A DNA stretch of 45,880 nt from positions 1-45,880 of the forward strand of contig NIVC01004438.1 of NCBI GenBank assembly GCA_002269645.1, given 5' to 3'. Under the pieces are notes generated by a model. It was not told the DNA's origin, did not search any database, and saw only the letters and a program-made list of their open reading frames with translations. This DNA comes from Macrostomum lignano. Taxonomy: Eukaryota. The first letter of the stretch is position 1. Every line of letters starts with the position of its first letter. Made by a program: the position numbers and the translations under genes. Of the stretch, positions 749-43,553 are shown piece after piece.

Positions 749-1338
<590 letters not shown>

Positions 1339-7504: not shown

Positions 7505-7509
7505 CTGGG

Positions 7510-8750: not shown

Positions 8751-9274
<524 letters not shown>

Positions 9275-13317: not shown

Positions 13318-13475
13318 GTGAGGAAAGAAGGATGCAGAAATCGTGTTGTTTTGTTTAAATGGGACTATTTTTTCTAGTACAAGATTAGCCTCAGCCTGTC
13401 ATTTCATCATCAGCTTTTTCTTATTGATTCCAGCACCTTGTCACTCCTCGTTAAACTGACTTGCTGACTCGCCAA

Positions 13476-15328: not shown

Positions 15329-15729
15329 GTGAGCGAATTTATCCGGTTGCTTTTAGCAGACAGAAATTGCTACTCAGATCGCAGGCTGCTGCTGCTGCTA
15401 ACTCGCTACTTTTCCATGCCCTGTCCTGCCTTAAAAATGAAATCTAACAATCTATTTTCACCAGACCTTGAGACATTGCATTTGTTCAGAACTCCATTAG
15501 TTTGAGTGATGAAACCTTGAGAGCAAGGAAAGTGGTTATTATCAAGAACAATAAACTGGTTCATAATTCTTAAATAAATTTCAGTTTAGGGCAAGGCCAA
15601 GGGTTGGGGTCTATTGTTAGGGCCAACAATCACTCAATTTTCATTTACCTGCTAAAAATAATTATTGTTCTGATTATCAACAGCTTTATGGCAGGCAGCA
15701 ATAGATGAGCGAAAATCTTTGAGACCTGT

Positions 15730-16441
15730 TGCAGGGACTCCAATTTCCCGACCTTTTTTTACCATCCCGGGATTCTCGGGATGTCAATTTCCTGGACTTT
15801 TATAATACCGGGATTTTCAAATCCAGTAGTAACGGTGTTTTTTCTAATCCCGGGTCCTAGCGATCCCGGAAAATATTTAATCCTTTTTTATTTAATCCCA
15901 GAATTTAAAACCCGGGATTTTGTCTCGGGATCCCGGAACTGAAAACGCGGGATTTTGTCTCAGGATCTCGGAACTGAAAATATGAAGATTTTGTCCCGGG
16001 ATCCCTGGATTGGAAACCCGGGTTTTTGTCCCGGGATCCCTGGATTGGAAAGTCGGATTTTTGTCCCGGAATCCCTGGATTGGAAACCCGTTATTTTGTC
16101 CCGGAATCCCTGGATTGGAAACCTAGGATTTTGTCCCGGAATCCCTGGATTGGAAACCCGGGGTTTTGTCCCGGAATCCCTGGATTGGAAACCCGTTATT
16201 TTGTCCCGGAATCCCTGGATTGGAAACCTAGGATTTTGTCCCGGAATCCCTGGATTGGAAACCTAGGATTTTGTCCCGGAATCCCTGGATTGGAAACCCG
16301 GGGTTTTGTCCCGGAATCCCTGGATTGGAAACCTAGGATTTTGTCCCGGAATCCCTGGATTGGAAACCCGGGGTTTTGTCCCGGGATCCCTGGTTTGTAA
16401 ACCCGAGATACTGTCCCAAGATCCTGGGCTTGCATTCCCTA
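15730..16441. repeat. 35-bp tandem array (TTTGTCCCGGAATCCCTGGATTGGAAACC...) within a CCCGGG-rich, possibly MITE-like element
   Basis: Regular 35-bp period from ~16000 to 16400, with degenerate copies on both sides. TIRs are only weakly suggested. Confidence 0.8.
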
Positions 16442-19400
16442 GCCAATCCCTATGATTGATGGCTCTGCTCTACCGAGTTTCTGTTGATGCAGACATCCAT
16501 CTGTGTACTGAGAACAGAGTTTGGAACGGAGAATTCCGAATGGAGCTGAGAGAGACTTAGGGGGGGGGGGTGGGGCACAAATTAATTCCAAATCAGTTTG
16601 GCTCTCATCTCTAGCCGAGAGCGCGAGATGCGAAGGCAGTATGCGAAAACAGAGTATTTGCCGTGCCCGCATGCATAATTCAGACAAAGTTCAGCAGCTT
16701 TTCACTGACGATTGCAGCTCCCCCCCAGTTGCGCGACTCGAAAATGCTGCGCTTTCCCTGGAATCAAAAATTCCCCCGTCCCCCCCGGGGAATCGGCATC
16801 CCTAACTAAGCCATTCGTTTCCCTTCTCCCCTCTCGCCTCCCGTCCCCCGCTCGATCAAGCCGAGCTCCGACAGTTGCAAATCTCCCCAATAGAGAAAAT
16901 TTGCTTCCGCCAAGATCTGCAGCAGCAGGTGATGATCCCGAGATCAAATGTTGTTGGCGGTCTGCCCCGGGGGCTGTGGATCCCAAGGAACATTTCTGCG
17001 CAGTTGACAATAATAAATATATTATTAATAATTCCTCAAGCAGTCAATTGACCCACCGAGAGTTTGGACTCATCTGATTTCCTATTTGAGTGAGTTTCAT
17101 TGCCTTTCTGGGCAGCCTTTCACGTGTTTTGCTGACAAAAAAGAACTGTTCTGTTAAAATCGGGGGCACGCATCTTAGCTGATTCGGATGCTGAGGAATG
17201 AGAATGATGACGCTAGTCCAGCCTCCTGTGGGAGTAGACTGAGCAGCAGTTGGTCGGCTGAATTCTGAGATAAAAAAATATTCAATAAAAATATCTAGAA
17301 AACTGGCAATAAATTTATTTGCATTATGATCTAGCATCAAATGGTGCGTTTTCAACAGTGAAAATCTGCAAGTTTACGCTCGAATTTCGCTCGATTCCGC
17401 GATGTTCGACCCCGGTTTCGATTTCGAAGCTCAATAAAGCAATCAGGAAAATGGGGAACTTTCTGGAAGACAATTAGCGGGATCCAGTGAGCGGAACTGA
17501 ATGATATTGGCTGCAATCGAAATGCGAGAACGCGATGATTGCAGTGGGAAATTCTCCCAGCCGACAGATGCTCCGCACCGGTGCCTGCTCACACAGTTTC
17601 TTTGAGTGCAGTTTCTACTCAAAAGAAAATTGCCTCTCAGAAACAAAAGTAGCGCTTGCTCAGATTTTGCTACTGGCTGCGAGGAGCTTGGAGAGAGTGA
17701 GTCTTGCTTTCAAGCAAGTCAATGGACTCCAGATGCTGCTGCAGCGGCAGAAGGAAGCAGCTGGATCGACCAGCATGCGCGCTTCGTGCAGTTTTCTGCG
17801 CCAGCTAGAGGGAAGCGAAATTGACGAAATTAGTTTGGCGGCTCAGACCGGGAAGATAAAAGAGGGAACGCGTGTAGTAAAAAGAGCACACAGGGGCCGC
17901 GCCCTCCCGTAACGGGATTCGGGTTGCATCGATTTTTAATTCGAAATCGGATCGAGCGCTCTCCGGTCTCCGGGAGGGGGCCAGCTATAAAAGACAGAAA
18001 TGTTACACTGAAGAATTGTGGAAAGTTTAGACCAAAATTGTCTGGGACTTCTGGGGCAGAAAATTCATCAGGAATTCGCGTGTTGTGTAAGAAAGTAGGG
18101 GCTTTTTGGCAGTGGAAGTGGGATCTGGGGGCATTCGATTTTTAATTTTCATTCAAGCAAGTTGGTTGAGGTGCCTGCTGTGGCTCCTCTGTAGTTCGAG
18201 GCTCTCTGGAAGAATCCTTCGAGCCAAAATCTCTTGCCTTGCCTTTCAATACAGGCCCTAGCGACGGCATGGATGTGACTGTCTCCGCTCTCTCCTTCAC
18301 TTTCACTCTCAGCTCACTCCGCCACCCCCCTTACCCAACGCGTCAGCCAGTGGCCGGGGAATCCCCGGGTCAACAGCTGAAGCAAATGCTGGTAATGAGG
18401 AGTCTCGCGCGGTAATTGAATTGCGGCCCCGCTGCCCGCCCACCGGCCTAACTATCCCGATCCGCCAGTGGCAGGGGGCTGCCCAGATGGACGCCTTATT
18501 GAACATGACACTGAGACACTCCCGATCCACCGTTCCTCAGCTACAATCCCTGCGCCGCGCTGCAGGCTGACTCCTGTTCGCAGCCCCAAGGAAAAGTGCA
18601 CTCGAACGAGCCTTAACGGAGGCTGGTATCGCTATTGGAATTACTTTACTCCCTTCGTTGCCTCTTTCGCCTCGGGGGCTGGAAGAGAGGGAGCTGGCGA
18701 GGCATCTCAGACCGGCTTTTGGGACAAGGAAACAGAGATGGCGCAAGCAAGAGTTTGCATGCATTTATTACCAAAGATGCGCCCCTACCCAGCTGCATTG
18801 CCTCGGCTCGCGTTTTCATGCGTGCGCAAGTTTGCAAATTGCCAATGTGTGTCTGTTTGCGCGTGTTAGAGATGCAAGGACACAAGCATACCGAGCAGAC
18901 AGAGCTGCTTTTGTCCTATTTAGCCATACGAGTAAAATTTAGCTTGGCTACTGCTGCTCCGTAACCATTTAGCTCGTCCATCCGCCCAACACCAACTTAG
19001 ATGCTTTTTGTCCTCGCATTCACTGGTAATGAGGAATTTGGCTCTTTTATCGGCTGCTTGCTTGCGTGGCATGGTAACTTTTTCTTTTAGCCAAGCTGTA
19101 ATTGCAGCGGGAAGCTCAGGTCAAGCCATTCGGTCGGGCCCCAGGTGCACTTCACACCAAGAAGCTCATCCGTCCTTATTTACCTTCAATCTTCCGGTTG
19201 ACTTCTCTGTTGTAACTAAGGCTCTCCATCTTTCTCCGGCAGTCAGGCCGCTATCTATTAGAACAGTTAGTTGGGCGGTAACACGAGAACCGGTAAAGAG
19301 GTTGCGGTCTGGACCAAAGTGCCAAACAGTGTCCTACCTGGTCACCTTAACTCCACCTTTCACTCTGCGACAACGCACGCAAATCTATATAGAGTTGGTT

Positions 19401-19669
19401 CCTTTTCGAAATAGCAAGTCAGTATTCAAAAGAAGCAAACGTTGACTCGCATTTAAAGCTGTTTTTGTCACAGAATATTCTTCTGTGGTTTTTGTTGGTC
19501 AGTCGACGCCACAAATACTAAAATAACTAGATGGGCCACTCAGGGCATATACGTCGTATATTCTTAGTAAAACAGCTTTCTAATTTCAATTCAGTAGCAA
19601 AGAAGAATACATAAGCTATTTTGTAAAAAGGCAGCTGAAATAACTTTGATAGGTTTAGAAGCCCACTAG

Positions 19670-20860
19670 CAATCTACGCCCCCCGTTGGGGAGCCAAAGA
19701 AATGCAATACACGTTTTTTAATAAGCTACATATATCCTTGAAATCTTAAAAAATCTCCTGTCAAACCTTGTAAGCCTTGACATGTCAATAATTCCCCCCC
19801 ACAAGCTTTAACACATCAACTTCCCCCCTTGACATCTCAGCAATGCCCCCAATAAGCCTTGGAAATCAAAAATATCTGTCAACCTTCTAACCCTAACCCT
19901 AGCCTAACCCTAACCCTAACCCTAACCCTAACCCTAACCCTAACCCTAACCTAACTCTAAAGCATTGAAATTTCAGTAATTCTCTTTAAGAGTCATTATA
20001 GCACTACTACAGCATTATAGCGATTCCCTGCAAGCCTCGACATCGTAGGGATTCCCAAATGAATCTCTTAACTTCGACATGAAGCTTCTTTTATTTTTTA
20101 CATTACGCTTTTTTTATCAGCGATCCCTCCCCTGAGGAGGCATCAAATAATGCAATAAAAAGTTTTCAATAAACTACATGTAGCTTCTGGCTTTAGCCTT
20201 GAAATTTCATTTATACCCCCGTGAGCCTTGACATCTCAGCTATTCCCCCCGTAAGCCTTAACATGTCAGCGATGGCCCCCATAAACCTTGAAATCTAAAA
20301 AATCCCCTGTTATTCTGTTAACCTTGAAACCCGATAAAATCTAACCCTCAACCCACACCTGACCTAAACCTAACTTTAACCCAACCTAAAGCCTTGAAAT
20401 CTCAGCAATTCTTCTCCCCTAAGCCTTGACATTTTAGTGATTCCTTCTTTAAGAATCACAGAACTATAACGATTTCCACCTAGCTTTGACATCGTAGCAA
20501 TTCCCAAATGAATCTTTTAACTTCGACATGACTTTTCTTTTATGTATACGTAGTGCTACTTTTATTTTTTACATGACTCTTCTTCTATCAGCGTCCCCCC
20601 CCCGTGGCGAGCCAACAAAGAATGCAATAAAAAAATTGAGTAAAGTACATGAACTTTGAAGTAGCTTCTGACTTTTGCTTTGACATCTCAGAACCCCCCC
20701 CCCGTAATCTCAGTTATTCTCTGAGAGCCTTGACGTCTCAGTTTTTCTCCCCACCACAGCATTATAGCTGCATTTATTTTTACATGACACCCTTCATGTC
20801 TGACATGACGCTTCTTTTATTGTACCATGATGCTTCTTAATTTTTTAAATGACACTCATT
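19670..20860. repeat. Degenerate ~460-bp tandem repeat (2 full copies plus 1 partial) with an internal ~30-bp AGCCTTGACATCTCAGC subrepeat
   Basis: Shared landmarks: CCCC...GAGCCAA..AATGCAATA at ~19680, ~20125 and ~20595; TTCCCAAATGAATCT.TTAACTTCGACATGA at ~20052 and ~20501. Confidence 0.7.
19887..19960. repeat. Interstitial telomere-like (CCCTAA)n tract
   Basis: Seven perfect consecutive CCCTAA units (19908-19949) plus degenerate flanks. Confidence 0.85.
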
Positions 20861-23800
20861 AGTTTTTAAATGAGGCTTCTATGATTTTTTCTTGACGCTT
20901 CTATGATTTTTAAATGACGCTTCTATGATTTTTTACATGACGCTTCAATGATTTTTATATGACGCTTCTATGATTGTTTACATGACGCTTCAATGATTTT
21001 TTAAATGACGCTTCTATGATGTTTATATGACGCTTCTACGATTTTTTACATGACGCTTCTATGATTGTTTACATGACGCTTCTATGACTTTTTACATGAC
21101 GCTTCTACGATTTTTTACGTGACGCTTCTATGATTGTTTACATGACGCTTCTATGATTTTTTACATGACGCTTCTATGATTCATTACATGACGCTTCTAT
21201 GATTTTTTACATGACGCTTCTATGATTCATTACATGACGGTTCTATGATTTTTTACATGACGCTTCTATGATTCATTACATGACGCTTCTATGATTTTTT
21301 ACATGACGCTTCTATGATTGTTTACATGACGCTTCTATGATTTTTATATGACGCTTCTACGATTTTTTACATGGTGCTTCTATGATTTTTTACATGACGC
21401 TTCTATGATTTTTTACATGACGCTTCTATGATTTTTTACATGACGCTTCTATGATTTTTATATGACGCTTCTACGATTTTTTACATGGTGCTTCTATGAT
21501 TTTTTACATGACGCTTCTATGATTGTTTACATGACGCTTCTATGAATTTTTACATGACGCTTCTATGATTTTTAATGAGGCTTCTATGATTTTTTACATG
21601 ACGCTTCTATGATTTTTATATGACGCTTCTATGATTTTATATGACGCTTCTACGATTTTTTACATGGCGCTTCTATGATTGTTTACATGACGCTTCTATG
21701 ATTTTTAAATGAGGCTTGTATTATTTTTTACTTGACGCTTCTATGATTGTTTACATGACGCTTCTATGATTGTTTACATGACGCTTCTTTGATTGTTTAC
21801 ATGACGCTTCTATGATTGTTTACATGACGCTTCTATGATTTTTTACATGACGCTTCTATGATTTTTACATGACGCTTCTATGATTGTTTACATGACGCTT
21901 CTATGATTTTTTACATGACGCTTCTATGATTTTTACATGACGCTTCTATGATTGTTTACATGACGCTTCTATGATTTTTTACATGACGCTTCTATGATTT
22001 TTAAATGACGCTTCTATGATTTTTTCATGACGCTGCTACGATTTTTTACATGACGCTTCTATGATTGTTTACATCACGCTTTTGTGATTTTTACATGACG
22101 CTTCTATGATTTTTAAAATGACGCTTCTATGATTGTTTACATGACGCTTCTATGATTGTTTACATGACGCTTCTACGATTTTTTACATGGTGCTTCTATG
22201 ATTTTTTACATGACGCTTCTATGATTGTTTACATGACGCTTCTATGAATTTTTACATGACGCTTCTATGATTTTTAAATGAGGCTTCTATGATTTTTACA
22301 TGACGCTTCTATGACTTTTAAATGAGGCTTCTATGATTTTTTACATGACGCTTCTATGATTTTTTAAATGACGCTTCTATGATTGTTTACATCACGCTTT
22401 TGTGATTTTTACATGACGCTTCTATGATTTTTAAAATGACGCTTCTATGATTGTTTACATGACGCTTCTATGATTGTTTACATGACGCTTCTATAATTTT
22501 TTTAAATGACGCTTCTATGATTTTTTACATGACGCTTCTATGATTGTTTACATGACGCTTCTAGGATTTTTGACATGACGCTTCTATGATTGTTTACATG
22601 ACGCTTCTATGAATTTTTACAAGACGCTTCTATGATTTTTTAAATGACGCTTCTATGATTGTTTACATGACGCTTCTATGACTGTTTACATGACGCTTCA
22701 ATGATTTTTTTAAATGACGCTTCTATGATTTTTATATGACGCTTCTACGATTTTTTACATGACGCTTCCATGATTGTTTACATGACGCTTCTATGACTTT
22801 TTACATGACGCTTCTACGATTTTTTACGTGACGCTTCTATGATTGTCTACATGACGCTTCTATGATTTTTTACATGACGCTTCTATGATTGTTTACATGA
22901 CGCTTCTATGATTCATTACATGACGGTTCTATGATTTTTTACATGACGCTTCTATGATTCATTACAGGACGCTTCTATGATTTTTTACATGACGCTTCTA
23001 TGATTGTTTACATGACGCTTCTATGATTTTTATATGACGCTTCTACGATTTTTTACATGGTGCTTCTATGATTTTTTACATGACGCTTCTATGATTTTTC
23101 ACATGACGCTTCTATGATTTTTTACATGACGCTTCTATGATTTTTATATGACGCTTCTACGATTTTTTACATGGTGCTTCTATGATTTTTTACATGACGC
23201 TTCTATGATTGTTTACATGACGCTTCTATGATTTTTACATGACGCTTCTATGATTTTTAATGACGCTTCTATGATTTTTTACATGACGCTTCTATGATTT
23301 TTATATGACGCTTCTATGATTTTATATGACGCTTCTACGATTTTTTACATGGCGCTTCTATGATTGTTTACATGACGCTTCTATGATTTTTAATGACGCT
23401 TGTATTATTTTTTACTGACGCTTCTATGATTGTTTACATGACGCTTCTATGATTGTTTACATGACGCTTCTTGATTGTTTACATGACGCTTCTATGATTG
23501 TTTACATGACGCTTCTATGATTTTTTACATGACGCTTTTATGATTTTTTACATGACGCTTCTATGATTGTTTACATGACGCTTCTATGATTTTTACATGA
23601 CGCTTCTATGATTTTTAATGACGCTTCTATGATTTTTTACATGACGCTTCTATGATTTTTATATGACGCTTCTATGATTTTATATGACGCTTCTACGATT
23701 TTTTACATGGCGCTTCTATGATTGTTTACATGACGCTTCTATGATTTTTAAATGACGCTTCTATTATTTTTTACATGACGCTTCTATGATTGTTTACATG

Positions 23801-26800
23801 ACGCTTCTATGATTGTTTACATGACGCTTCTATGATTGTTTACATGACGCTTCTATGATTTTTAAATGACGCTTCTATGATTTTTACATGACGCTTCTAT
23901 GATTTTTAAATGACGCTTCTATGATTTTTTACATGACGCTTCTATGATTTTTTACATGACGCTTCTATGATTGTTTACATGACGCTTCTATGATTTTTAC
24001 ATGACGCTTCTATGATTTTTAATGACGCTTCTATGATTGTTTACATGACGCTTCTATGATTGTTTACATGACGCTTCTATGATTTTTTACATGGCTTCTA
24101 TGATTTTTACATGACGCTTCTATGATTTTTACATGACGCTTTATGATTGTTTACATGACGCTTCTATGATTTTTATATGACGCTTCTACGATTTTTACAT
24201 GGCTTCTATGATTTTTTACATGACGCTTCTATGATTGTTTACATGACGCTTCTATGATTTTTACATGACGCTTCTATGATTTTTAATGACGCTTCTATGA
24301 TTTTTACATGACGCTTCTATGATTTTTAATGACGCTTCTATGATTTTTTACATGACGCTTCTATGATTTTTACATGACGCTTCTATGATTTTTATGACGC
24401 TTCTATGATTTTTTACATGGCTTCTATGATTTTTTACATGACGCTTCTATGATTGTTTACATGACGCTTCTATGATTTTTACATGACGCTTCTATGATTT
24501 TTAATGACGCTTCTATGATTTTTTACATGACGCTTCTATGATTTTTATATGACGCTTCTATGATTTTTATGACGCTTCTATGATTTTTTACATGACGCTT
24601 CTATGATTGTTTACATGACGCTTCTATGATTTTTAATGACGCTTCTATGATTTTTTACATGACGCTTCTATGATTGTTTACATGACGCTTCTATGATTGT
24701 TTACATGACGCTTCTATGATTTTTACATGACGCTTCTATGATTGTTTACATGACGCTTCTATGATTTTTTACATGACGCTTCTATGATTTTTACATGACG
24801 CTTCTATGATTGTTTACATGACGCTTCTATGATTTTTTACATGACGCTTCTATGATTTTTACATGACGCTTCTATGATTGTTTACATGACGCTTCTATGA
24901 TTTTTACATGACGCTTCTATGATTTTTACATGACGCTTCTATGATTTTTTCATGACGCTTCTATGATTTTTACATGACGCTTCTATGATTGTTTACATGA
25001 CGCTTCTATGATTTTTACATGACGCTTCTATGATTTTTAATGACGCTTCTATGATTGTTTACATGACGCTTCTATGATTGTTTACATGACGCTTCTATGA
25101 TTTTTTACATGACGCTTCTATGATTTTTTACATGACGCTTCTATGATTGTTTACATGACGCTTCTATGATTTTTACATGACGCTTCTATGATTTTTACAT
25201 GACGCTTCTATGATTTTTACATGACGCTTCTATGATTTTTAATGACGCTTCTATGATTTTTACATGACGCTTCTATGATTTTTACATGACGCTTCTATGA
25301 TTGTTTACATGACGCTTCTATGATTGTTTACATGACGCTTCTATGATTTTTAATGACGCTTCTATGATTTTTACATGACGCTTCTATGATTGTTTACATG
25401 ACGCTTCTATGATTTTTACATGACGCTTCTATGATTGTTTACATGACGCTTCTATGATTTTTACATGACGCTTCTATGATTTTTAATGACGCTTCTATGA
25501 TTGTTTACATGACGCTTCTATGATTTTACATGACGCTTCTATGATTTTTACATGACGCTTCTATGATTTTTACATGACGCTTCTATGATTTTTACATGAC
25601 GCTTCTATGATTGTTTACATGACGCTTCTATGATTTTTACATGACGCTTCTATGATTTTTTACATGACGCTTCTATGATTGTTTACATGACGCTTCTATG
25701 ATTTTTACATGACGCTTCTATGATTTTTACATGACGCTTCTATGATTTTTTACATGACGCTTCTATGATTGTTTACATGACGCTTCTATGATTTTTACAT
25801 GACGCTTCTATGATTGTTTACATGACGCTTCTATGATTTTTACATGACGCTTCTATGATTTTTACATGACGCTTCTATGATTTTTACATGACGCTTCTAT
25901 GATTTTTTACATGACGCTTCTATGATTTTTACATGACGCTTCTATGATTTTTACATGACGCTTCTATGATTTTTACATGACGCTTCTATGATTTTTACAT
26001 GACGCTTCTATGATTTTTTACATGACGCTTCTATGATTTTTACATGACGCTTCTATGATTTTTACATGACGCTTCTATGATTTTTTACATGACGCTTCTA
26101 TGATTTTTACATGACGCTTCTATGATTTTTACATGACGCTTCTATGATTTTTACATGACGCTTCTATGATTTTTACATGACGCTTCTATGATTTTTACAT
26201 GACGCTTCTATGATTTTTATATGACGCTTCTATGATTTTTACATGACGCTTCTATGATTTTTTACATGACGCTTCTATGATTTTTTACATGACGCTTCTA
26301 TGATTTTTACATGACGCTTCTATGATTTTTACATGACGCTTCTATGATTGTTTACATGACGCTTCTATGATTTTTACATGACGCTTCTATGATTTTTACA
26401 TGACGCTTCTATGATTGTTTACATGACGCTTCTATGATTTTTACATGACGCTTCTATGATTTTTACATGACGCTTCTATGATTGTTTACATGACGCTTCT
26501 ATGATTTTTACATGACGCTTCTATGATTTTTACATGACGCTTCTATGATTTTTACATGACGCTTCTATGATTTTTACATGACGCTTCTATGATTTTTACA
26601 TGACGCTTCTATGATTTTTACATGACGCTTCTATGATTTTTACATGACGCTTCTATGATTTTTACATGACGCTTCTATGATTTTTACATGACGCTTCTAT
26701 GATTGTTTACATGACGCTTCTATGATTTTTACATGACGCTTCTATGATTTTTACATGACGCTTCTATGATTTTTACATGACGCTTCTATGATTTTTACAT

Positions 26801-29800
26801 GACGCTTCTATGATTTTTACATGACGCTTCTATGATTTTTACATGACGCTTCTATGATTTTTACATGACGCTTCTATGATTTTTACATGACGCTTCTATG
26901 ATTTTTACATGACGCTTCTATGATTTTTACATGACGCTTCTATGATTGTTTACATGACGCTTCTATGATTTTTACATGACGCTTCTATGATTTTTACATG
27001 ACGCTTCTATGATTTTTACATGACGCTTCTATGATTTTTACATGACGCTTCTATGATTTTTACATGACGCTTCTATGATTTTTACATGACGCTTCTATGA
27101 TTTTTACATGACGCTTCTATGATTTTTACATGACGCTTCTATGATTTTTACATGACGCTTCTATGATTTTTACATGACGCTTCTATGATTTTTACATGAC
27201 GCTTCTATGATTTTTACATGACGCTTCTATGATTTTTACATGACGCTTCTATGATTTTTACATGACGCTTCTATGATTTTTACATGACGCTTCTATGATT
27301 TTTACATGACGCTTCTATGATTTTTACATGACGCTTCTATGATTTTTACATGACGCTTCTATGATTGTTTACATGACGCTTCTATGATTTTTACATGACG
27401 CTTCTATGATTTTTACATGACGCTTCTATGATTTTTACATGACGCTTCTATGATTTTTACATGACGCTTCTATGATTTTTACATGACGCTTCTATGATTT
27501 TTACATGACGCTTCTATGATTTTTACATGACGCTTCTATGATTTTTACATGACGCTTCTATGATTTTTACATGACGCTTCTATGATTTTTACATGACGCT
27601 TCTATGATTTTTACATGACGCTTCTATGATTTTTACATGACGCTTCTATGATTTTTACATGACGCTTCTATGATTTTTACATGACGCTTCTATGATTTTT
27701 ACATGACGCTTCTATGATTTTTACATGACGCTTCTATGATTTTTACATGACGCTTCTATGATTTTTACATGACGCTTCTATGATTTTTACATGACGCTTC
27801 TATGATTTTTACATGACGCTTCTATGATTTTTACATGACGCTTCTATGATTTTTACATGACGCTTCTATGATTTTTACATGACGCTTCTATGATTTTTAC
27901 ATGACGCTTCTATGATTTTTACATGACGCTTCTATGATTTTTACATGACGCTTCTATGATTTTTACATGACGCTTCTATGATTTTTACATGACGCTTCTA
28001 TGATTTTTACATGACGCTTCTATGATTTTTACATGACGCTTCTATGATTTTTACATGACGCTTCTATGATTTTTACATGACGCTTCTATGATTTTTACAT
28101 GACGCTTCTATGATTTTTACATGACGCTTCTATGATTTTTACATGACGCTTCTATGATTTTTACATGACGCTTCTATGATTTTTACATGACGCTTCTATG
28201 ATTTTTACATGACGCTTCTATGATTTTTACATGACGCTTCTATGATTTTTACATGACGCTTCTATGATTTTTACATGACGCTTCTATGATTTTTACATGA
28301 CGCTTCTATGATTTTTACATGACGCTTCTATGATTTTTACATGACGCTTCTATGATTTTTACATGACGCTTCTATGATTTTTACATGACGCTTCTATGAT
28401 TTTTACATGACGCTTCTATGATTTTTACATGACGCTTCTATGATTTTTACATGACGCTTCTATGATTTTTACATGACGCTTCTATGATTTTTACATGACG
28501 CTTCTATGATTTTTACATGACGCTTCTATGATTTTTACATGACGCTTCTATGATTTTTACATGACGCTTCTATGATTTTTACATGACGCTTCTATGATTT
28601 TTACATGACGCTTCTATGATTTTTACATGACGCTTCTATGATTTTTACATGACGCTTCTATGATTTTTACATGACGCTTCTATGATTTTTACATGACGCT
28701 TCTATGATTTTTACATGACGCTTCTATGATTTTTACATGACGCTTCTATGATTTTTACATGACGCTTCTATGATTTTTACATGACGCTTCTATGATTTTT
28801 ACATGACGCTTCTATGATTTTTACATGACGCTTCTATGATTTTTACATGACGCTTCTATGATTTTTACATGACGCTTCTATGATTTTTACATGACGCTTC
28901 TATGATTTTTTACATGACGCTTCTATGATTTTTACATGACGCTTCTATGATTTTTACATGACGCTTCTATGATTTTTACATGACGCTTCTATGATTTTTA
29001 CATGACGCTTCTATGATTTTTACATGACGCTTCTATGATTTTTACATGACGCTTCTATGATTTTTTACATGACGCTTCTATGATTTTTACATGACGCTTC
29101 TATGATTTTTACATGACGCTTCTATGATTTTTACATGACGCTTCTATGATTTTTACATGACGCTTCTATGATTTTTACATGACGCTTCTATGATTTTTAC
29201 ATGACGCTTCTATGATTTTTACATGACGCTTCTATGATTTTTACATGACGCTTCTATGATTTTTACATGACGCTTCTATGATTTTTACATGACGCTTCTA
29301 TGATTTTTTACATGACGCTTCTATGATTTTTACATGACGCTTCTATGATTTTTACATGACGCTTCTATGATTTTTACATGACGCTTCTATGATTGTTTAC
29401 ATGACGCTTCTATGATTTTTACATGACGCTTCTATGATTTTTACATGACGCTTCTATGATTGTTTACATGACGCTTCTATGATTTTTACATGACGCTTCT
29501 ATGATTTTTACATGACGCTTCTATGATTGTTTACATGACGCTTCTATGATTTTTACATGACGCTTCTATGATTTTTACATGACGCTTCTATGATTTTTAC
29601 ATGACGCTTCTATGATTTTTACATGACGCTTCTATGATTTTTACATGACGCTTCTATGATTTTTACATGACGCTTCTATGATTTTTACATGACGCTTCTA
29701 TGATTTTTACATGACGCTTCTATGATTTTTACATGACGCTTCTATGATTTTTACATGACGCTTCTATGATTTTTACATGACGCTTCTATGATTTTTACAT

Positions 29801-32800
29801 GACGCTTCTATGATTTTTACATGACGCTTCTATGATTTTTACATGACGCTTCTATGATTTTTACATGACGCTTCTATGATTTTTACATGACGCTTCTATG
29901 ATTTTTACATGACGCTTCTATGATTTTTACATGACGCTTCTATGATTTTTACATGACGCTTCTATGATTTTTACATGACGCTTCTATGATTGTTTACATG
30001 ACGCTTCTATGATTTTTACATGACGCTTCTATGATTTTTACATGACGCTTCTATGATTTTTACATGACGCTTCTATGATTTTTACATGACGCTTCTATGA
30101 TTTTTTACATGACGCTTCTATGATTTTTACATGACGCTTCTATGATTTTTACATGACGCTTCTATGATTTTTACATGACGCTTCTATGATTTTTACATGA
30201 CGCTTCTATGATTTTTACATGACGCTTCTATGATTTTTACATGACGCTTCTATGATTTTTACATGACGCTTCTATGATTTTTACATGACGCTTCTATGAT
30301 TTTTACATGACGCTTCTATGATTTTTACATGACGCTTCTATGATTTTTAATGACGCTTCTATGATTTTTTACATGACGCTTCTATGATTTTTTACATGAC
30401 GCTTCTATGATTTTTACATGACGCTTCTATGATTTTTACATGACGCTTCTATGATTTTTACATGACGCTTCTATGATTTTTACATGACGCTTCTATGATT
30501 TTTACATGACGCTTCTATGATTTTTACATGACGCTTCTATGATTTTTACATGACGCTTCTATGATTTTTACATGACGCTTCTATGATTTTTATGACGCTT
30601 CTATGATTTTTACATGACGCTTCTATGATTGTTTACATGACGCTTCTATGATTTTTACATGACGCTTCTATGATTTTTACATGACGCTTCTATGATTGTT
30701 TACATGACGCTTCTATGATTTTTACATGACGCTTCTATGATTTTTACATGACGCTTCTATGATTTTTACATGACGCTTCTATGATTTTTACATGACGCTT
30801 CTATGATTTTTACATGACGCTTCTATGATTTTTACATGACGCTTCTATGATTTTTACATGACGCTTCTATGATTTTTACATGACGCTTCTATGATTTTTA
30901 CATGACGCTTCTATGATTTTTTACATGACGCTTCTATGATTTTTACATGACGCTTCTATGATTTTTACATGACGCTTCTATGATTTTTACATGACGCTTC
31001 TATGATTTTTACATGACGCTTCTATGATTTTTACATGACGCTTCTATGATTTTTACATGACGCTTCTATGATTTTTACATGACGCTTCTATGATTGTTTA
31101 CATGACGCTTCTATGATTTTTACATGACGCTTCTATGATTTTTACATGACGCTTCTATGATTTTTACATGACGCTTCTATGATTTTTACATGACGCTTCT
31201 ATGATTTTTACATGACGCTTCTATGATTTTTACATGACGCTTCTATGATTTTTACATGACGCTTCTATGATTTTTACATGACGCTTCTATGATTTTTAAT
31301 GACGCTTCTATGATTGTTTACATGACGCTTCTATGATTTTTACATGACGCTTCTATGATTTTTAATGACGCTTCTATGATTTTTACATGACGCTTCTATG
31401 ATTGTTTACATGACGCTTCTATGATTTTTACATGACGCTTCTATGATTTTTACATGACGCTTCTATGATTGTTTACATGACGCTTCTATGATTTTTACAT
31501 GACGCTTCTATGATTGTTTACATGACGCTTCTATGATTTTTACATGACGCTTCTATGATTTTTTAATGACGCTTCTATGATTTTTACATGACGCTTCTAT
31601 GATTTTTACATGACGCTTCTATGATTTTTACATGACGCTTCTATGATTTTTACATGACGCTTCTATGATTTTTTACATGACGCTTCTATGATTGTTTACA
31701 TGACGCTTCTATGATTTTTACATGACGCTTCTATGATTTTTACATGACGCTTCTATGATTTTACATGACGCTTCTATGATTTTTTACATGACGCTTCTAT
31801 GATTGTTTACATGACGCTTCTATGATTTTTACATGACGCTTCTATGATTTTTACATGACGCTTCTATGATTTTTACATGACGCTTCTATGATTTTTACAT
31901 GACGCTTCTATGATTTTACATGACGCTTCTATGATTTTTTACATGACGCTTCTATGATTTTTACATGACGCTTCTATGATTTTTACATGACGCTTCTATG
32001 ATTTTTACATGACGCTTCTATGATTTTTACATGACGCTTCTATGATTTTTTACATGACGCTTCTATGATTTTTACATGACGCTTCTATGATTTTTTACAT
32101 GACGCTTCTATGATTTTTTACATGACGCTTCTATGATTTTTATATGACGCTTCTATGATTTTTTACATGACGCTTCTATGATTTTTTACATGACGCTTCT
32201 ATGATTTTTACATGACGCTTCTATGATTTTTACATGACGCTTCTATGATTTTTACATGACGCTTCTATGATTTTTACATGACGCTTCTATGATTTTTACA
32301 TGACGCTTCTATGATTTTTACATGACGCTTCTATGATTTTTTACATGACGCTTCTATGATTTTTACATGACGCTTCTATGATTTTTATGACGCTTCTATG
32401 ATTTTTTACATGACGCTTCTATGATTGTTTACATGACGCTTCTATGATTTTTACATGACGCTTCTATGATTTTTACATGACGCTTCTATGATTGTTTACA
32501 TGACGCTTCTATGATTTTTACATGACGCTTCTATGATTTTTACATGACGCTTCTATGATTGTTTACATGACGCTTCTATGATTTTTACATGACGCTTCTA
32601 TGATTTTTACATGACGCTTCTATGATTTTTACATGACGCTTCTATGATTTTTACATGACGCTTCTATGATTTTTACATGACGCTTCTATGATTTTTTACA
32701 TGACGCTTCTATGATTTTTACATGACGCTTCTATGATTTTTATGACGCTTCTATGATTTTTTACATGACGCTTCTATGATTGTTTACATGACGCTTCTAT

Positions 32801-34210
32801 GATTTTTACATGACGCTTCTATGATTGTTTACATGACGCTTCTATGATTTTTACATGACGCTTCTATGATTTTTACATGACGCTTCTATGATTTTTAAAT
32901 GAGGCTTCTATGATTTTTACATGACGCTTCTATGATTTTTACATGACGCTTCTATGATTTTTACATGACGCTTCTATGATTTTTATATGACGCTTCTATG
33001 ATTTTTACATGACGCTTCTATGATTGTTTACATGACGCTTCTATGATTTTTACATGACGCTTCTATGATTTTTTACATGACGCTTCTATGATTTTTACAT
33101 GACGCTTCTATGATTTTTTACATGACGCTTCTATGATTTTTACATGACGCTTCTATGATTTTTATATGACGCTTCTATGATTTTTACATGACGCTTCTAT
33201 GATTTTTTACATGACGCTTCTATGATTTTTACATGACGCTTCTATGATTTTTACATGACGCTTCTATGATTTTTACATGACGCTTCTATGATTTTTACAT
33301 GACGCTTCTATGATTTTTAAATGAGGCTTCTATGATTTTTACATGACGCTTCTATGATTTTTAAATGACGCTTCTATGATTTTTACATGACGCTTCTATG
33401 ATTTTTACATGACGCTTCTATGATTTTTAATGACGCTTCTATGATTGTTTACATGACGCTTCTATGATTGTTTACATGACGCTTCTATGATTTTTAATGA
33501 CGCTTCTATGATTTTTACATGACGCTTCTATGATTGTTTACATGACGCTTCTATGATTTTTTACATGACGCTTCTATGATTGTTTACATGACGCTTCTAT
33601 GAATTTTTACATGACGCTTCTATGATTTTTTAATGACGCTTCTATGATTGTTTACATGACGCTTCTATGATTGTTTACATGACGCTTCTATGATTTTTAA
33701 ATGACGCTTCTATGATTTTTATATGACGCTTCTACGATTTTTTACATGACACTTCTATGATTGTTTACATGACGCTTCTACGATTGTTTACATGACGCTT
33801 CTATGATTGTTTACATGACGCTTCAATAATTTTTTAAATGACGCTTCTATGATTTTTATATGACGCTTCTACGATTTTTACATGACGCTTCTATGATTGT
33901 TTACATGACGCTTCTATGACTTTTTACATGACGCTTCTACGATTTTTTACGTGACGCTTCTATGATTGTTTACATGACGCTTCTACGATTTTTTACATGG
34001 TGCTTCTATGATTGTTTACATGACGCTTCTATGATTGTTTACATGACGCTTCTATGATTTTTACATGACGCTTCTACGATTTTTATATAACGCTTCTACG
34101 ATTTTTTACATGGCGCTTCTATGATTGTTTACATGACGCTTCTATGATTTTTTACATGACGCTTCTATGATTTTTTACATGACGCTTCTATGATTTTTAC
34201 ATGACGCTTC
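20841..34210. repeat. 22-bp satellite array (TTTTTACATGACGCTTCTATGA)n, about 600 monomers, in Kv intron 1
   Basis: Directly visible, with 22/23-bp variants (TTGTTTAC, TTTTTT). Pure core at about 27.4-28.9 kb and variant-rich edges. Confidence 0.99.
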
Positions 34211-35574
34211 TTTTTAAAAAGTCTTTTAGTTTTCCTGACGTTGAAAAGCTTTAATTAAAAAAATTATACTCTATGAAAATTCGAACCATCGTCGCTGAAT
34301 TTAGCAGTTCAGTTTGTTCACCTCTAGGCTAGCTCTCATCGTTTTGATAACATCAAATTTTGCACTTATATAATTCAACACTTGAAAATCCAAGCATAGA
34401 GTAAATTACACGAAGCAGTTATGACATAATCAGTTTCTCAGTCAGTCAGTATCAGTTAACAATATGCATGGTTACGCAATTTAAATCAAGTCTGGTGCTA
34501 CGCTTCCACACTGCATTTTCAATTCAAGTCGGAGTTACAATTCAGTTATGATGCAATCTATTTCAGAATCAGAATTCAACCAGTCAGTTTTTTCTCTAGC
34601 ATTCTTACAATGCATTTCAAGTCGAAAAGTTTGCTTGACCTTTGCAAAAAAGCATGTTTTTCGAATATTTAATGCCTTTAGCATCGAGCAATTTCTTAGC
34701 CACGATGCATGTACAGTCACGGGAAAATTTCTGATTGAACAGTGCAAGTTCGAACAAAATCGGTCCAGCCATTTTTTCTCTAATCGATCACATAGACACA
34801 GACAGACCATTTTTAGTATATAGGAAGTTCGCAGGCGTTAAACAGCTTGCTAATTGGTTCAGCAATAATGTACATTAGCCAGTCCACTGAAATGTACATG
34901 GCAGCTTTAGGCTGGAATTCCGAGAAAGGCAATAAAAATTGGAGTCGGGCGGAGGGGGGTAGGGTGGAAGGGCACGGTTGGAGGGTTTAATCTGGGGGGT
35001 TAAGAACCAATAAAGAAGCCTTGGCTTTTAAAATACATTAAAATGCTTCAGTTTAACTTACTACTTAACTGAAAGTAGCTTACACGCAAATGTGCTGAGT
35101 GGCCCATCTAGTTATTCTAGTATCTGTGGTCGACGTTAAATTAATTAGAAAACACTCGATGCTGGGGCTTCACCGCAGATATGCAAATAGCGACCCAGCT
35201 ATTTACATTCCGATTTGGCAAAATTCCTCCTTTGCTAGACTATAAAAATCTACATAGCAAAAAGTAACTTTGTCTCTAGAGGCGTCGCAGTGCACCCCTT
35301 TGGGAGTTCAAACTATCCTGCAGTATTCATCGGAGAGAGAATTCGACATGTTTGTCAAAGCGTTGAATCGATAATTTAAACAAAAATCTGCCCTTTGGAA
35401 CCATTTACATTTTGAGCAGCAAGACGTGCAAAAGAAGACACTACAATGCAATAATTTCCTACAATTCTGGAAAGCAACGTCCCACAACCAGTGCTGGGTC
35501 GATTCTGTCCATTCCGCTGGCTCCTGAGCACATAGGAGCTGAGATACAAGCGCGCGGACTCATGCACTGTTCAT

Positions 35575-35640
35575 ACAGGATGTACAGCAGCCCTGACTTT
35601 CCAACCGTCAGGCATGTACACTCTCGGTGCCTTGGAGGAG
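35575..35640 (-). mobile_element. Fragment of SINE family B body
   Basis: TGTACAGCAGCCCTGACTTTCCAACCGTCAGGCATGTACACTCTCGGTGCCTTGG matches 2618-2672. Confidence 0.55.
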
Positions 35641-35899
35641 CCGGCCCTTGTGGCTGTGAATCGCACGACCGCCCTCGGTCAGGCCTCTGCCTCTGATCCA
35701 AAGGATTCATGTTTTTAGAAAACCAAGCGTTGCCTTCATATTTAGTGAGTCGTTGTGTTCATGGAACCAGTTGGGGGGTTCATTTCGATCTCTTGGAATC
35801 ATGACCGATGATCCTTCCTGCTCACGTCGCTACTAGATTGAGAGAGCAGAGGACTCACTGTATGAACTTTATCTGCATTGTCCACTTGATCTGTTTCAG

Positions 35900-36650
35900 C
35901 TGTGGGCGATGCTGCTCCTGCTGCTCATGATCTGCAGCGTGATGTGCTACTGCCTGCAGACGCACACGGCATTCCGCACGCCGAGCTCGAAGGTGTACCT
36001 GGGCAACACCACCGAGGGGCCGTGCAACAACGAGTCGCGCAGATGGAATCCAAAGTTCCGCAAAGACTGCGAAACCGAGACGATGAAAGGCTTAGTAGTA
36101 GTGGACGTCACTCTCAATGCCATATTCACATTTGAGTTCGTCATCAAGCTGGTTGTCGCGCCTGACAAGCCGAAGTTTCTGCGCTCGCCAATCTCCCTCA
36201 TGGACATCATCATCCTGGGCTCCTACTGGATCTACGTTTCCCTGACATTCTTCTACTACTATCGTCTGGGTGCTGAAGAGCTGCGCGCCTCGATGCAGGA
36301 GCAGTCGGCCGGAGTGGACCTCTGGTGGCTCAACGTGCTGTTCATGTCACAGGCGCTGCGCATATTGCGCGTCTTCAAGATCAGCAAAATCAGTCGAGGC
36401 CTCCGAGTCCTGATGCTGACGGTGAAGAAGTCGATCCCGGAGCTGGTGCTGCTGGGCTTCTTGCTGATGAACGGCATGTTCCTGTTCAGCTCCATGGTGT
36501 ACATGGCCGAGTACAATCAGTACGACACTTTCTCGGACATACCGCAGGCGTTCTGGTGGAGCATTGTGACGCTGACTACAGTGGGCTACGGGGACATTGT
36601 GCCCAAGGGCGGCCCGGGCTTCATCATCGGCTCTGTAGCGGCCGTATCTG
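35900..36650 (+). CDS. Kv channel coding exon 2: S1-S5, pore helix/filter, first half of S6
   Basis: Acceptor is tgtttcag| at 35899. The exon reads LWAMLLLLLMICSV (S1), AIFTFEF (S2), SLMDII (S3), LRILRVFKISK (S4), FWWSIVTLTTVGYGDIVP (pore). Donor is TCTG|GTGAGC at 36650/36651. Confidence 0.95.
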
Positions 36651-42993: not shown

Positions 42994-43553
42994 GCTGCAT
43001 TGTGACTGGCTTGGCCATACCGATCATTGGAAACAACTTCAACACCTACTACAAGTACATGCAGAACCACCTGAAGGAGACAAAGTACATGAAGATAATG
43101 CAGAAGGACAATCAGAGCCAGCAGTGCAGCGGCCGCTATGGCCAAGGCGGCAACAAGAAGTTCATCCAACGAAATCACGACATGGACGACAAAGCGATGA
43201 ACGGCCTGATCAAGAAGAACCGGCAGCAGAACTTCTCCGCCAGGATGCCGCCGCCCATGGCCAGGCCGGCCACAACCGGCGGCTCCCCCCGAGACGTTGA
43301 CAGCCCGGTGAAGACCGCCGCCACCGCGGCTGCTGAAGCCGCCCCAACGCCCGCAGTTGTCGAAGAGTCCGTGTCAGAGACAATAACAACGGTGGCAGTG
43401 GTTGAGGAGGCCAAGATCGCCACCATGGCCGCTGTCGAATCATCACCGACTCCGCCGCCACCCCCGCCGACGCCGCCGCCGCCGCCGCCGCCACAGTCGG
43501 CTCCGTGCGCAGTGGAAGAGTCGATGGTGGAAGAGCAGGAGCAGTTTGTGTAG
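42994..43553 (+). CDS. Kv channel coding exon 3: second half of S6 and cytoplasmic C-terminus
   Basis: Branch-like ACTAAT at 42971 is followed by a pyrimidine tract and CAG| at 42993. The phase-1 join restores AVSG-CIVTGLAIPIIGNNFNTYY, which aligns with the Kv S6 GVLxIAxPVPVIVxNF. TAG stop at 43551-43553. Confidence 0.92.

What the first reader, a model, noticed from the sequence alone, without database searches (positions are those of the whole stretch)
36341..36388. Voltage sensor has lost its two outer gating arginines
Seen: S4 reads F-M-S-Q-A-L-R-I-L-R-V-F-K-I-S-K. Established: Shaw/Kv3 and Shaker S4 read R1xxR2xxR3xxR4xxK5xxR6, and R1-R4 carry most of the gating charge. Here R1 is F and R2 is Q, while R3, R4 and K5 remain. 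The S2 F/E charge-transfer centre (IFTFE) and the S3 Asp are kept, and the outer S2 Glu is shortened to Asp. Inference: shallow or shifted voltage dependence, a leak-like channel, or a subunit that retunes partner channels.
Basis: partly seen in the sequence, partly recalled or inferred. Interest (0 to 1): 0.75.

Follow-up and report, generated by a model that had tools for sequence, protein, structure and literature searches.

The report
Flatworm Shaw-like channel with charge-poor S4
The window holds an intact flatworm (Macrostomum-type) potassium-channel gene whose voltage sensor lacks the two outermost arginines. This is a conserved family trait shared with Drosophila Shaw and many invertebrate Shaw-like channels, so it is real but not very surprising.

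Summary
Window 36341-36388 (+) encodes FMSQALRILRVFKISK. Three independent alignments to Kv1.2, Shaker, Kv3.1 and Kv2.1 put no basic residue at R1 or R2 (two put F304 at R1, one N301; all put Q307 at R2). There is no R, K or H in the 24 residues before R3.

The segment is S4 of an intact three-exon, 592-aa Kv gene (T1 domain, S1-S6, TVGYGD filter). Its T1 exon is 90% identical to a Macrostomum lignano protein.

The trait is not private. All 20 members of a flatworm-wide orthologue clade have Q at R2 and a non-basic R1, with R3, R4, K5, R6 and K7 invariantly basic. S4 is among their most conserved segments.

The clade sits, with moderate support, in the Shaw (Kv3)-like radiation that is expanded in lophotrochozoans. 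There, 44 of 108 representatives lack both R1 and R2. Drosophila Shaw itself naturally reads E at R1 and S at R2 and gates very shallowly. A flatworm Kv3 relative (N.at-Kv3.2) with an altered S4 conducts an omega current.

Most likely this is a weakly voltage-dependent Shaw-type subunit. Regulatory-subunit and gating-pore readings remain open. I rate it a new member of a known kind, of modest interest.

The parts
14861..15328 (+). Exon 1 (aa 1-156): start codon, T1/BTB_2 tetramerisation domain with the HX5CX20CC zinc motif, and the T1-S1 linker. Donor GT at 15329-15330.
   Evidence: Pfam BTB_2 at E = 9e-21. Best PDB matches are the Aplysia Shaw T1 (3KVT) and Kv3.1. 90% identical to Macrostomum lignano P0140, which ends at the same ...SSLPA.
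15329..35899 (+). Intron 1 (about 20.6 kb), containing a 13.4-kb 22-nt satellite array at 20803-34211.
   Evidence: GT...AG boundaries, flat GC of 0.32, TRF array of about 602 copies at 94% match.
35900..36650 (+). Exon 2 (aa 157-406, plus the first base of codon 407): S1, S2, S3, S4, S4-S5 linker, S5, pore helix and filter, and the start of S6.
   Evidence: Ion_trans at E = 2e-36. The exon junctions are read through continuously in homologues P0121, P0122, P0005 and P0001.
36104..36136 (+). S2 countercharge and charge-transfer centre: D225 (36104-36106, outer acid, Asp instead of Glu), F232 (36125-36127) and E235 (36134-36136).
   Evidence: Alignments. In the clade, D is 20/20, F is 16/20 (L in 4) and E is 20/20.
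36203..36205 (+). S3 Asp (D258), equivalent to Kv1.2 D259 and Shaker D316.
   Evidence: D in 20/20.
36311..36391 (+). S4 helix (aa 294-320 in the AF2 model). The finding's 36341-36388 corresponds to aa 304-319.
   Evidence: helix 294-320; pLDDT block means 82-88 over S4. Clade conservation of S4 is 0.85.
36341..36352 (+). R1 position = F304 (36341-36343) and R2 position = Q307 (36350-36352): the two missing outer gating charges.
   Evidence: In the clade, R1 is S16/F1/T1/G1/A1 and R2 is Q in 20/20.
36359..36397 (+). Retained basic ladder: R310 (R3), R313 (R4), K316 (K5), K319 (R6) and R322 (K7).
   Evidence: all 20/20 basic.
36578..36595 (+). K+ selectivity filter TVGYGD (aa 383-388), followed by I-V-P. 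Val occupies the external TEA site (Shaker T449).
42994..43553 (+). Exon 3 (last two bases of codon 407 through aa 592 and the stop): the rest of S6 and a low-complexity Pro/Ala-rich C-terminus. Acceptor AG at 42992-42993; stop at 43551-43553.
   Evidence: Matches P0001 ...SGCIVTGLAIPIVGNNFNTYYKYMQN.
43014..43022 (+). S6 gating hinge reads A414-I415-P416 instead of P-x-P.
   Evidence: A-x-P in 20/20 clade members.

Best explanation
The segment is S4 of an intact, selectively maintained alpha-subunit gene of the Shaker superfamily. The gene belongs to a flatworm-wide clade within the lophotrochozoan Shaw (Kv3)-like expansion.

Shown: the sensor keeps a complete inner apparatus (R3, R4, K5, R6, K7; S2 Phe and Glu; S3 Asp) and a canonical TVGYGD pore, but has had no charge at R1 or R2 throughout the flatworm clade sampled.

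Inferred: only about two or three charges per subunit can cross the charge-transfer centre. The tetramer therefore gates with low total gating charge. That would give a shallow and probably shifted G-V, possibly with some open probability near rest, as in Drosophila Shaw, which naturally lacks the same two charges. The A-x-P hinge probably retunes coupling or kinetics further.
For: Intact GT-AG gene model and 592-aa ORF. BTB_2, Ion_trans and Ion_trans_2 domains. Confident Kv-like AF2 model (pLDDT 86.8) whose best structural match is Kv3.1.

F and Q sit at R1 and R2 in two of the three alignments; the Kv3.1 alignment puts N301 at R1; none gives a basic residue.

Across 20 flatworm orthologues, Q at R2 is 20/20, R1 is never basic, and R3 to K7 plus the S2 and S3 countercharges are invariant. 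S4 and the S4-S5 linker are among the most conserved segments (0.85 and 0.93, against 0.28 for the S3-S4 loop). This argues for a working sensor rather than decay.

Precedent: Drosophila Shaw has E, S and S at positions 1, 2 and 7, a net charge of +3, does not saturate below +200 mV and has a very shallow voltage dependence (PMC2217113, PMC2217114). It is open at resting potential and sets the resting potential in neurons (PMC2386553).
Against: No functional data exist for any member of this clade.

In Shaker, transplanting only the Shaw charge changes (ESS) altered the G-V little (PMC2217114), so the phenotype cannot be read from charge count.

Alanine substitutions in the P-x-P hinge are poorly tolerated in other Kv channels (PMC3440756). 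A homotetramer may therefore be non-conducting, or gate in a way not predicted here.

Subfamily placement is only moderately supported (66% NJ bootstrap). TM-core profiles score Kv1, Kv2 and Kv3 equally.
Confidence: 0.5

Rival explanations
1. It is a regulatory ('silent') subunit. It does not form conducting homotetramers but co-assembles through its Shaw-type T1 with other flatworm Shaw-like subunits and retunes their voltage dependence and kinetics.
For: The S6 P-x-P hinge is altered (A-I-P) in 20/20 clade members. Hinge prolines are needed for voltage-dependent gating, and all vertebrate silent KvS subunits have a defective P-x-P (PMC3440756). Regulatory subunits have arisen independently several times inside expanded Kv subfamilies, and Shaw is expanded in lophotrochozoans, with 13 genes in Lottia and 9 in Capitella (PMC3519636). 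Other Shaw-like flatworm paralogues exist as potential partners (P0162, P0165, P0003, P0005).
Against: KvS subunits lack the second proline, whereas here the second is kept and the first is lost. Many other Shaw-like representatives also carry T/A/S/V-x-P, so this need not mean silence. The pore, filter and S4-S5 linker are as conserved as in conducting channels. There are no co-expression or assembly data.
Confidence: 0.25
2. It is a natural gating-pore (omega-current) channel. With no arginine at R1 or R2 and a shortened outer S2 acid, the voltage-sensor domain itself leaks cations at negative potentials, as reported for the flatworm channel N.at-Kv3.2.
For: N.at-Kv3.2 (Notoplana, Kv3 family) has H at R1, G at R3 and Asp for the outer S2 Glu. 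It conducts a weakly inward-rectifying, poorly selective, 4-AP-sensitive and TEA-insensitive current attributed to the gating pore (PMC2443804). Shaker R1 to A, C, S or V gives omega current (cited in PMC2443804). Sixteen of 20 orthologues have Ser at R1, and all have Asp at the outer S2 site. The sister paralogue P0005 has the unusual D/D/E acidic pattern and the same S3-Glu-to-R1 spacing (32 residues) that the paper gives for N.at-Kv3.2. This hints that N.at-Kv3.2 is a close relative.
Against: In the window protein R1 is a bulky Phe, which is more likely to plug than to open the pore. The window clade keeps R3 (G in N.at-Kv3.2), E235 (D270 there) and D258 (E293 there). In N.at-Kv3.2 the H325S mutation abolished the omega phenotype, so Ser at R1 is not sufficient. 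With R3 as the first charge, the resting state may simply park R3 in the transfer centre and stay sealed. The outer S2 Asp is common in ordinary Kv4 and Shaw-like channels.
Confidence: 0.12
3. It is a decaying or non-functional gene copy, or the missing arginines are an artefact of the gene model or alignment.
For: The locus is repeat-ridden, with a 20.6-kb intron carrying a 13.4-kb satellite. Macrostomum carries close paralogous copies (the 90% identical T1 exon).
Against: The ORF is uninterrupted across three exons with canonical splice sites. All diagnostic motifs are intact. The same S4 is present in 20 orthologues from monogeneans, trematodes and cestodes. Three alignment methods agree that neither position is basic, and no basic residue lies within 24 residues upstream of R3.
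Confidence: 0.03

Closest known systems
Drosophila Shaw (Kv3-family archetype) and classic protostome Shaw / egl-36-type channels
   Same: Both have a Shaw-type T1 with a Zn motif. Both naturally lack basic residues at R1 and R2 while keeping R3, R4, K5 and R6. Drosophila Shaw has E, S and S at positions 1, 2 and 7 and a net charge of +3 (PMC2217113, PMC2217114). Insect and nematode representatives read EFxSII-R..R..K. The documented consequence is very shallow voltage dependence and activity near rest (PMC2217113, PMC2386553).
   Different: The residues differ: F (or S) and Q here, against E and S there. K7 is kept here (R322) but lost in Shaw. Classic Shaw keeps P-V-P and an outer S2 Glu, whereas this clade has A-I-P and Asp. 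The flatworm clade does not nest inside the classic Shaw group; the two join only at a 66% node, and identity is no more than about 35-40%.
N.at-Kv3.2 from the polyclad flatworm Notoplana atomata (Klassen, Spencer and Gallin 2008, PMC2443804)
   Same: Both are flatworm Kv3-family subunits with a non-basic R1, Asp at the outer S2 acidic position and a canonical GYG pore. It shows that S4 charge loss in flatworm Shaw-like channels can produce a qualitatively new conduction mode.
   Different: N.at-Kv3.2 keeps R2 and lacks R3 (Gly). It has Asp at the inner S2 site and Glu in S3. The window protein lacks R2, keeps R3, and has E235 and D258. Orthology could not be tested because the sequence was not retrievable here.
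Vertebrate Kv3.1 (KCNC1; PDB 7PHH)
   Same: It is the best full-length sequence match in the PDB (202 bits) and the best structural match. The two share the T1 Zn motif, the S2 FxxE, the S3 Asp and the RILRIFK core of S4.
   Different: Kv3.1 has Arg at R1 and R2, Glu at the outer S2 site, P-V-P in S6 and Tyr at the external TEA site. Identity is about 30%.
Electrically silent Kv subunits (vertebrate Kv5, 6, 8, 9; cnidarian NvShakR and jShal-gamma)
   Same: These are divergent paralogues inside an expanded Kv subfamily with a defective S6 P-x-P hinge and altered sensors. They modulate partners through T1-compatible co-assembly (PMC3440756, PMC3519636).
   Different: KvS subunits lose the second proline, whereas here the first is lost. 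KvS subunits belong to the Shab (Kv2) lineage. No evidence for silence exists here.

Membership tests
Shaker-superfamily Kv alpha subunit (Kv1-4 type) | N-terminal T1 (BTB_2) tetramerisation domain | tested here: met
   Pfam BTB_2 at E = 9e-21, aa 9-96.
Shaker-superfamily Kv alpha subunit (Kv1-4 type) | Six-TM Ion_trans core with a TVGYG selectivity filter | tested here: met
   Ion_trans at E = 2e-36. TVGYGD at aa 383-388. AF2 model with pLDDT 86.8 and a Kv fold.
Shaker-superfamily Kv alpha subunit (Kv1-4 type) | S4 with basic residues every third position, plus S2 and S3 acidic countercharges and the S2 Phe | tested here: met
   Five in-register basic residues (R3 to K7), with D225, F232, E235 and D258 present. 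Only R1 and R2 are missing.
Shaker-superfamily Kv alpha subunit (Kv1-4 type) | P-x-P gating hinge in S6 | tested here: not met
   Reads A414-I415-P416. A-x-P in 20/20 orthologues.
Shaw / Kv3 subfamily | Non-Shaker T1 with the HX5CX20CC zinc site | tested here: met
   H69-x5-C75-x20-C96C97 read from the sequence. A regex check passes for the window and fails for the Kv1 references. This feature is shared with Kv2 and Kv4, so it excludes only Kv1.
Shaw / Kv3 subfamily | T1 most similar to Shaw/Kv3 T1 (the subfamily-specific assembly domain) | tested here: met
   PDB: Aplysia Shaw T1 and Kv3.1 at 1e-22, Kv4 at 1e-19, Kv2 at 1e-14, Kv1 at 1e-7. Group HMMs: Kv3/Shaw 94.5 bits, Kv4 79.5, Kv2 79.3, Kv1 45.3.
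Shaw / Kv3 subfamily | Phylogenetic grouping with Shaw/Kv3 to the exclusion of Kv1, Kv2 and Kv4 | tested here: inconclusive
   The T1+core NJ tree groups the flatworm clade with lophotrochozoan Shaw-like genes, vertebrate Kv3 and classic Shaw at 66% bootstrap. Kv2 joins next (88%), then Kv4 (76%), then Kv1. The TM-core-only tree is unresolved, and core HMM scores tie for Kv1, Kv2 and Kv3. Nearest named outsiders are 'Shaw-like', 'egl-36-like' or 'subfamily C member 3-like'. No ML or Bayesian tree was made.
Shaw / Kv3 subfamily | Characteristic biophysics (vertebrate Kv3: high threshold and fast deactivation; Drosophila Shaw: shallow and non-inactivating) | not testable with these tools
   This requires electrophysiology.
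Electrically silent / regulatory Kv subunits | Loss of the second proline of the S6 P-x-P motif | tested here: not met
   The second proline (P416) is kept and the first is Ala. The KvS rule is from PMC3440756.
Electrically silent / regulatory Kv subunits | No homomeric current; modifies partner subunits in heteromers | not testable with these tools
   This requires expression and co-expression.
Natural omega-current Kv3 (N.at-Kv3.2 type) | Non-basic, compact residue at R1 together with Asp at the outer S2 acid | tested here: inconclusive
   The Asp is present (D225). R1 is non-basic but is a bulky Phe in the window, and Ser in 16/20 orthologues.
Natural omega-current Kv3 (N.at-Kv3.2 type) | Gly at R3, Asp at the inner S2 site and Glu in S3 (PMC2443804) | tested here: not met
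   The window has R310, E235 and D258.
Natural omega-current Kv3 (N.at-Kv3.2 type) | TEA-insensitive, 4-AP-sensitive, poorly selective inward-rectifying current | not testable with these tools
   This requires electrophysiology.

The most novel reading that the evidence does not exclude
The whole flatworm-wide clade, including orthologues in schistosomes, liver flukes and tapeworms, has a voltage-sensor domain that conducts cations at rest. Its features are Ser or Phe at R1, invariant Gln at R2, an outer S2 Asp and an A-x-P hinge that disables the canonical gate. That would make natural omega-current channels a conserved, phylum-level feature rather than a single curiosity in Notoplana.
Probability: 0.08. 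Interest if true: 0.75.

Novelty: new member of a known kind. Interest (0 to 1): 0.3.

Why it matters
The finding adds a well-delimited, apparently uncharacterised clade to the set of natural low-charge voltage sensors. The clade is conserved across the flatworms sampled, from free-living Macrostomum to monogeneans, flukes and tapeworms. Its invariant combination is Q at R2, a non-basic R1, Asp at the outer S2 site and an A-x-P hinge.

Such natural variants are useful test cases for three questions. How much gating charge does a Kv channel need? How do uncharged S4 residues and the S6 hinge set cooperativity? When does a gating pore open?

The clade is at most about 40% identical to any non-flatworm protein found here and is present in major parasites. 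It could therefore also be looked at as a parasite-selective channel. None of this overturns current understanding, because the key phenomenon is already documented in Drosophila Shaw and in N.at-Kv3.2.

Tried and rejected
1. The third homologue search, using the Aplysia Shaw T1 to harvest named full-length Shaw proteins, returned only T1-exon fragments. It gave no S4 information. I used PDB alignments and the representative search instead.

2. The TM-core-only NJ tree left deep nodes unresolved, with 0-13% support. Adding T1 helped, but placement in Shaw is still only 66%. No ML or Bayesian program was available.

3. I could not obtain the N.at-Kv3.1 or N.at-Kv3.2 sequences. A regex for H..R..G..R over all fetched proteins found nothing relevant. 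The paper's alignment is a figure and is not held as text.

4. The AF2 model's coordinates are not exposed. I therefore could not measure which S4 residue occupies the charge-transfer centre.

5. I tested the idea that another basic residue could be slid into R1 or R2. I rejected it because no R, K or H occurs in aa 286-309.

6. I considered a pseudogene or model artefact and rejected it (intact ORF, conserved orthologues).

7. tRNA and Rfam scans of the window found nothing.

8. Asp is normal in Kv4 and in half of the Shaw-like proteins.

Full report
**1. The observation**

Window 36341-36388 (+) translates to FMSQALRILRVFKISK; the opposite strand contains a stop. The stretch lies in a long open exon that reads from S1 through the TVGYGD filter into S6.

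HMMER alignments to Kv1.2 and Shaker line the segment up residue for residue with [25 protein letters not shown]. This gives F304 = R1, Q307 = R2, R310 = R3, R313 = R4, K316 = K5, K319 = R6 and R322 = K7. The alignment to human Kv3.1 opens a three-residue gap and places N301 at R1 and Q307 at R2. A 49-sequence MAFFT alignment reproduces the Kv1.2 register.

No arginine, lysine or histidine occurs in aa 286-309.

The accessory statements are also right. D225 aligns with the outer S2 Glu (Kv1.2 E226), F232 and E235 with the charge-transfer-centre F233 and E236, and D258 with the S3 Asp.

**2. What the locus is**

The S4 exon is the middle exon of a three-exon gene with canonical GT-AG introns:
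- 14861-15328: T1 domain.
- 35900-36650: S1 to early S6.
- 42994-43553: the rest of S6 and the C-terminus, with the stop at 43551-43553.

The gene encodes 592 aa. Homologues read continuously across both junctions. Pfam finds BTB_2 (9e-21), Ion_trans (2e-36) and Ion_trans_2.

An AlphaFold2 model built on 34 sequences is confident (pLDDT 86.8). It shows S4 as a helix spanning aa 294-320. Its best structural match in the PDB is human Kv3.1, followed by Kv4.

Intron 1 is about 20.6 kb and carries a 13.4-kb array of a 22-nt satellite.

The T1 exon is 90% identical to a Macrostomum lignano protein fragment that ends at exactly the same exon boundary. The window therefore comes from Macrostomum or a close relative, a free-living flatworm.

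**3. Relatives and conservation**

Near-full-length orthologues at 52-66% identity occur across Platyhelminthes: Cichlidogyrus, Calicophoron, Dicrocoelium, Trichobilharzia, Heterobilharzia, Schistosoma japonicum, Schistocephalus, Mesocestoides, Rodentolepis and others. An exhaustive HMMER scan of 1.84 billion representatives shows a sharp break after this block. All other hits are at most about 40% identical.

In the 20-member orthologue clade:
- R2 is Q in 20/20.
- R1 is S16, F1, T1, G1 and A1, and never basic.
- R3 and R4 are Arg in 20/20, K5 is K17/R3, R6 is Lys in 20/20 and K7 is Arg in 20/20.
- The outer S2 Asp, inner S2 Glu, S2 Lys and S3 Asp are each 20/20.
- The S2 Phe is 16/20, with Leu in cestodes.

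S4 (mean majority fraction 0.85) and the S4-S5 linker (0.93) are as conserved as S5, the pore and S6. The S3-S4 loop is free to vary (0.28). The charge-poor S4 is therefore an old, constrained trait, shared from Macrostomum to the parasitic flatworms. It is not a recent loss or decay. The Phe at R1 is specific to this Macrostomum gene.

**4. Family placement**

The T1 domain carries the HX5CX20CC zinc motif of non-Shaker Kv channels. It scores best against the Aplysia Shaw T1 and Kv3.1 (1e-22), ahead of Kv4 (1e-19), Kv2 (1e-14) and Kv1 (1e-7). Group HMMs agree: 94.5 bits for Kv3/Shaw, about 79 for Kv2 and Kv4, and 45 for Kv1.

The transmembrane core is not diagnostic. Kv1, Kv2 and Kv3 profiles tie at about 152 bits, and Kv1.2 is the best single PDB hit for the core alone. 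The full-length best PDB hit is Kv3.1.

In an NJ tree of T1+core (138 sequences, 200 bootstraps):
- The flatworm clade is monophyletic at 100%.
- It lies in a group of 85 sequences at 56%.
- That group joins vertebrate Kv3 and the classic E/S-type invertebrate Shaw at 66%.
- Kv2 branches outside at 88%, then Kv4 at 76%, then Kv1.

Every sampled member of the 85-sequence group is a mollusc, nemertean or annelid protein. Sixteen of the 20 proteins looked up are such proteins, and the 12 that carry a family name are called 'Shaw', 'Shaw-like', 'egl-36-like' or 'subfamily C member 3-like'. This matches the published lophotrochozoan Shaw expansion, with 13 genes in Lottia and 9 in Capitella (PMC3519636).

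I therefore file the gene as a divergent Shaw-related subunit. Subfamily membership is supported but not proven.

**5. How unusual the missing R1 and R2 are**

They are not very unusual. Drosophila Shaw, the founding member of the family, naturally has Glu at position 1 and Ser at positions 2 and 7, for a nominal S4 charge of +3 against +7 in Shaker (PMC2217113, PMC2217114). Insect and nematode Shaw representatives in my set read EFxSII-R-I.-R-LFK (P0369 is a moth 'Shaw-like' protein).

Among 108 non-flatworm members of the Shaw-like superclade:
- R1 is basic in only 27 and R2 in 42.
- 44 have neither.
- R3 is basic in 102 and R4 in 105.

Even among the classic families, Kv2.1 has Gln and Kv4 has Val or Thr at R1. 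An outer S2 Asp is standard in Kv4 and present in 57 of 108 Shaw-like sequences.

**6. An extra deviation**

The S6 gating hinge P-x-P reads A-I-P in the window and in all 20 orthologues. Hinge prolines are important for voltage-dependent gating, alanine substitutions are poorly tolerated, and vertebrate silent subunits all lack the second proline (PMC3440756). Here the first proline is lost instead. T/A/S/V-x-P variants are common in the lophotrochozoan Shaw-like expansion, so this is suggestive but not decisive.

**7. Mechanism**

Shown: the gene is intact, the pore signature is canonical, the inner sensor is complete, there are no outer charges, and constraint is strong.

Inferred: only R3, R4 and perhaps K5 can traverse the charge-transfer centre. 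Gating charge per channel should therefore be well below Shaker's. By analogy with Drosophila Shaw, the channel would have shallow, possibly shifted activation and might contribute to resting conductance. Drosophila Shaw has a very shallow G-V that does not saturate below +200 mV, is open at rest and sets the resting potential (PMC2217113, PMC2386553). I give this reading about 0.5.

One caveat applies. The Shaker ESS triple mutant shifted the G-V by only about +10 mV, while three conservative uncharged changes (ILT) did most of the work (PMC2217114). The window has Ile at the V369 position but not the other two ILT residues.

The rivals are:
- **Regulatory subunit, about 0.25.** It is supported by the hinge defect and by repeated evolution of such subunits in expanded Kv families (PMC3519636).
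- **Natural gating-pore channel, about 0.12.** The flatworm N.at-Kv3.2 has His at R1, Gly at R3 and Asp at the outer S2 site, and conducts an omega current (PMC2443804). However, the window keeps R3, E235 and D258 and has a bulky Phe at R1. H325S in N.at-Kv3.2 actually abolished the omega phenotype.
- **Decaying copy or artefact, about 0.03.**

The sister paralogue P0005 shares N.at-Kv3.2's odd D/D/E acidic pattern and its 32-residue S3-Glu-to-R1 spacing. This hints that the Notoplana channels are close relatives. I could not test that.

**8. Verdict**

This is a new, apparently uncharacterised member (a flatworm-wide clade) of a known kind, namely Shaw-type Kv subunits with naturally charge-poor S4 segments. 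Interest is modest (0.3). The most novel reading not excluded is a phylum-wide natural omega-current channel (probability about 0.08).

Noticed in passing
window 20803-34211: A 13.4-kb tandem array of a 22-nt unit (ACATGACGCTTCTATGATTTTT; about 602 copies, 94% matches) sits inside intron 1 of the Kv gene. It gives a flat GC of 0.32 and a strong AT skew over 13 kb.
   Followed up: partly
window 748-1802, 6077-6811, 7335-8087, 8668-9303, 9929-10618, 11306-11861, 13410-14348, 37422-38581, 39056-39823, 41626-42031: Numerous short-period minisatellites produce long spurious ORFs on both strands (for example the [16 protein letters not shown] and ALSDTVTH repeats). Several are variants of the same GTCTGTCT-type unit. 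No tRNA or Rfam family was found anywhere in the window.
   Followed up: partly
window 43014-43022 (aa 414-416): The S6 gating hinge is A-I-P instead of P-x-P and is invariant in all 20 flatworm orthologues. The neighbouring 'IIGNNF' has Gly where Kv1-4 have Val.
   Followed up: yes
P0003 and P0005 (Logan contigs; sister paralogues of the window clade): Two related proteins group with the flatworm clade at 97% bootstrap. They have N at R1, Q at R2 and Glu in S3. P0005 also has Asp at the inner S2 site, which matches the D/D/E pattern and the 32-residue S3-to-R1 spacing reported for the omega-current channel N.at-Kv3.2.
   Followed up: partly
window 43260-43550 (aa ~496-592): The C-terminal tail is low-complexity (Ala/Thr/Pro-rich, with a PPPPPPTPPPPPPP run) and unconserved. 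Orthologues have long, unrelated tails of 100-400 aa.
   Followed up: no
cestode orthologues P0123, P0135, P0138, P0139: The charge-transfer-centre Phe in S2 (window F232) is Leu in the tapeworm orthologues (VVLTxEF). This is a second sensor change layered on the missing R1 and R2.
   Followed up: no
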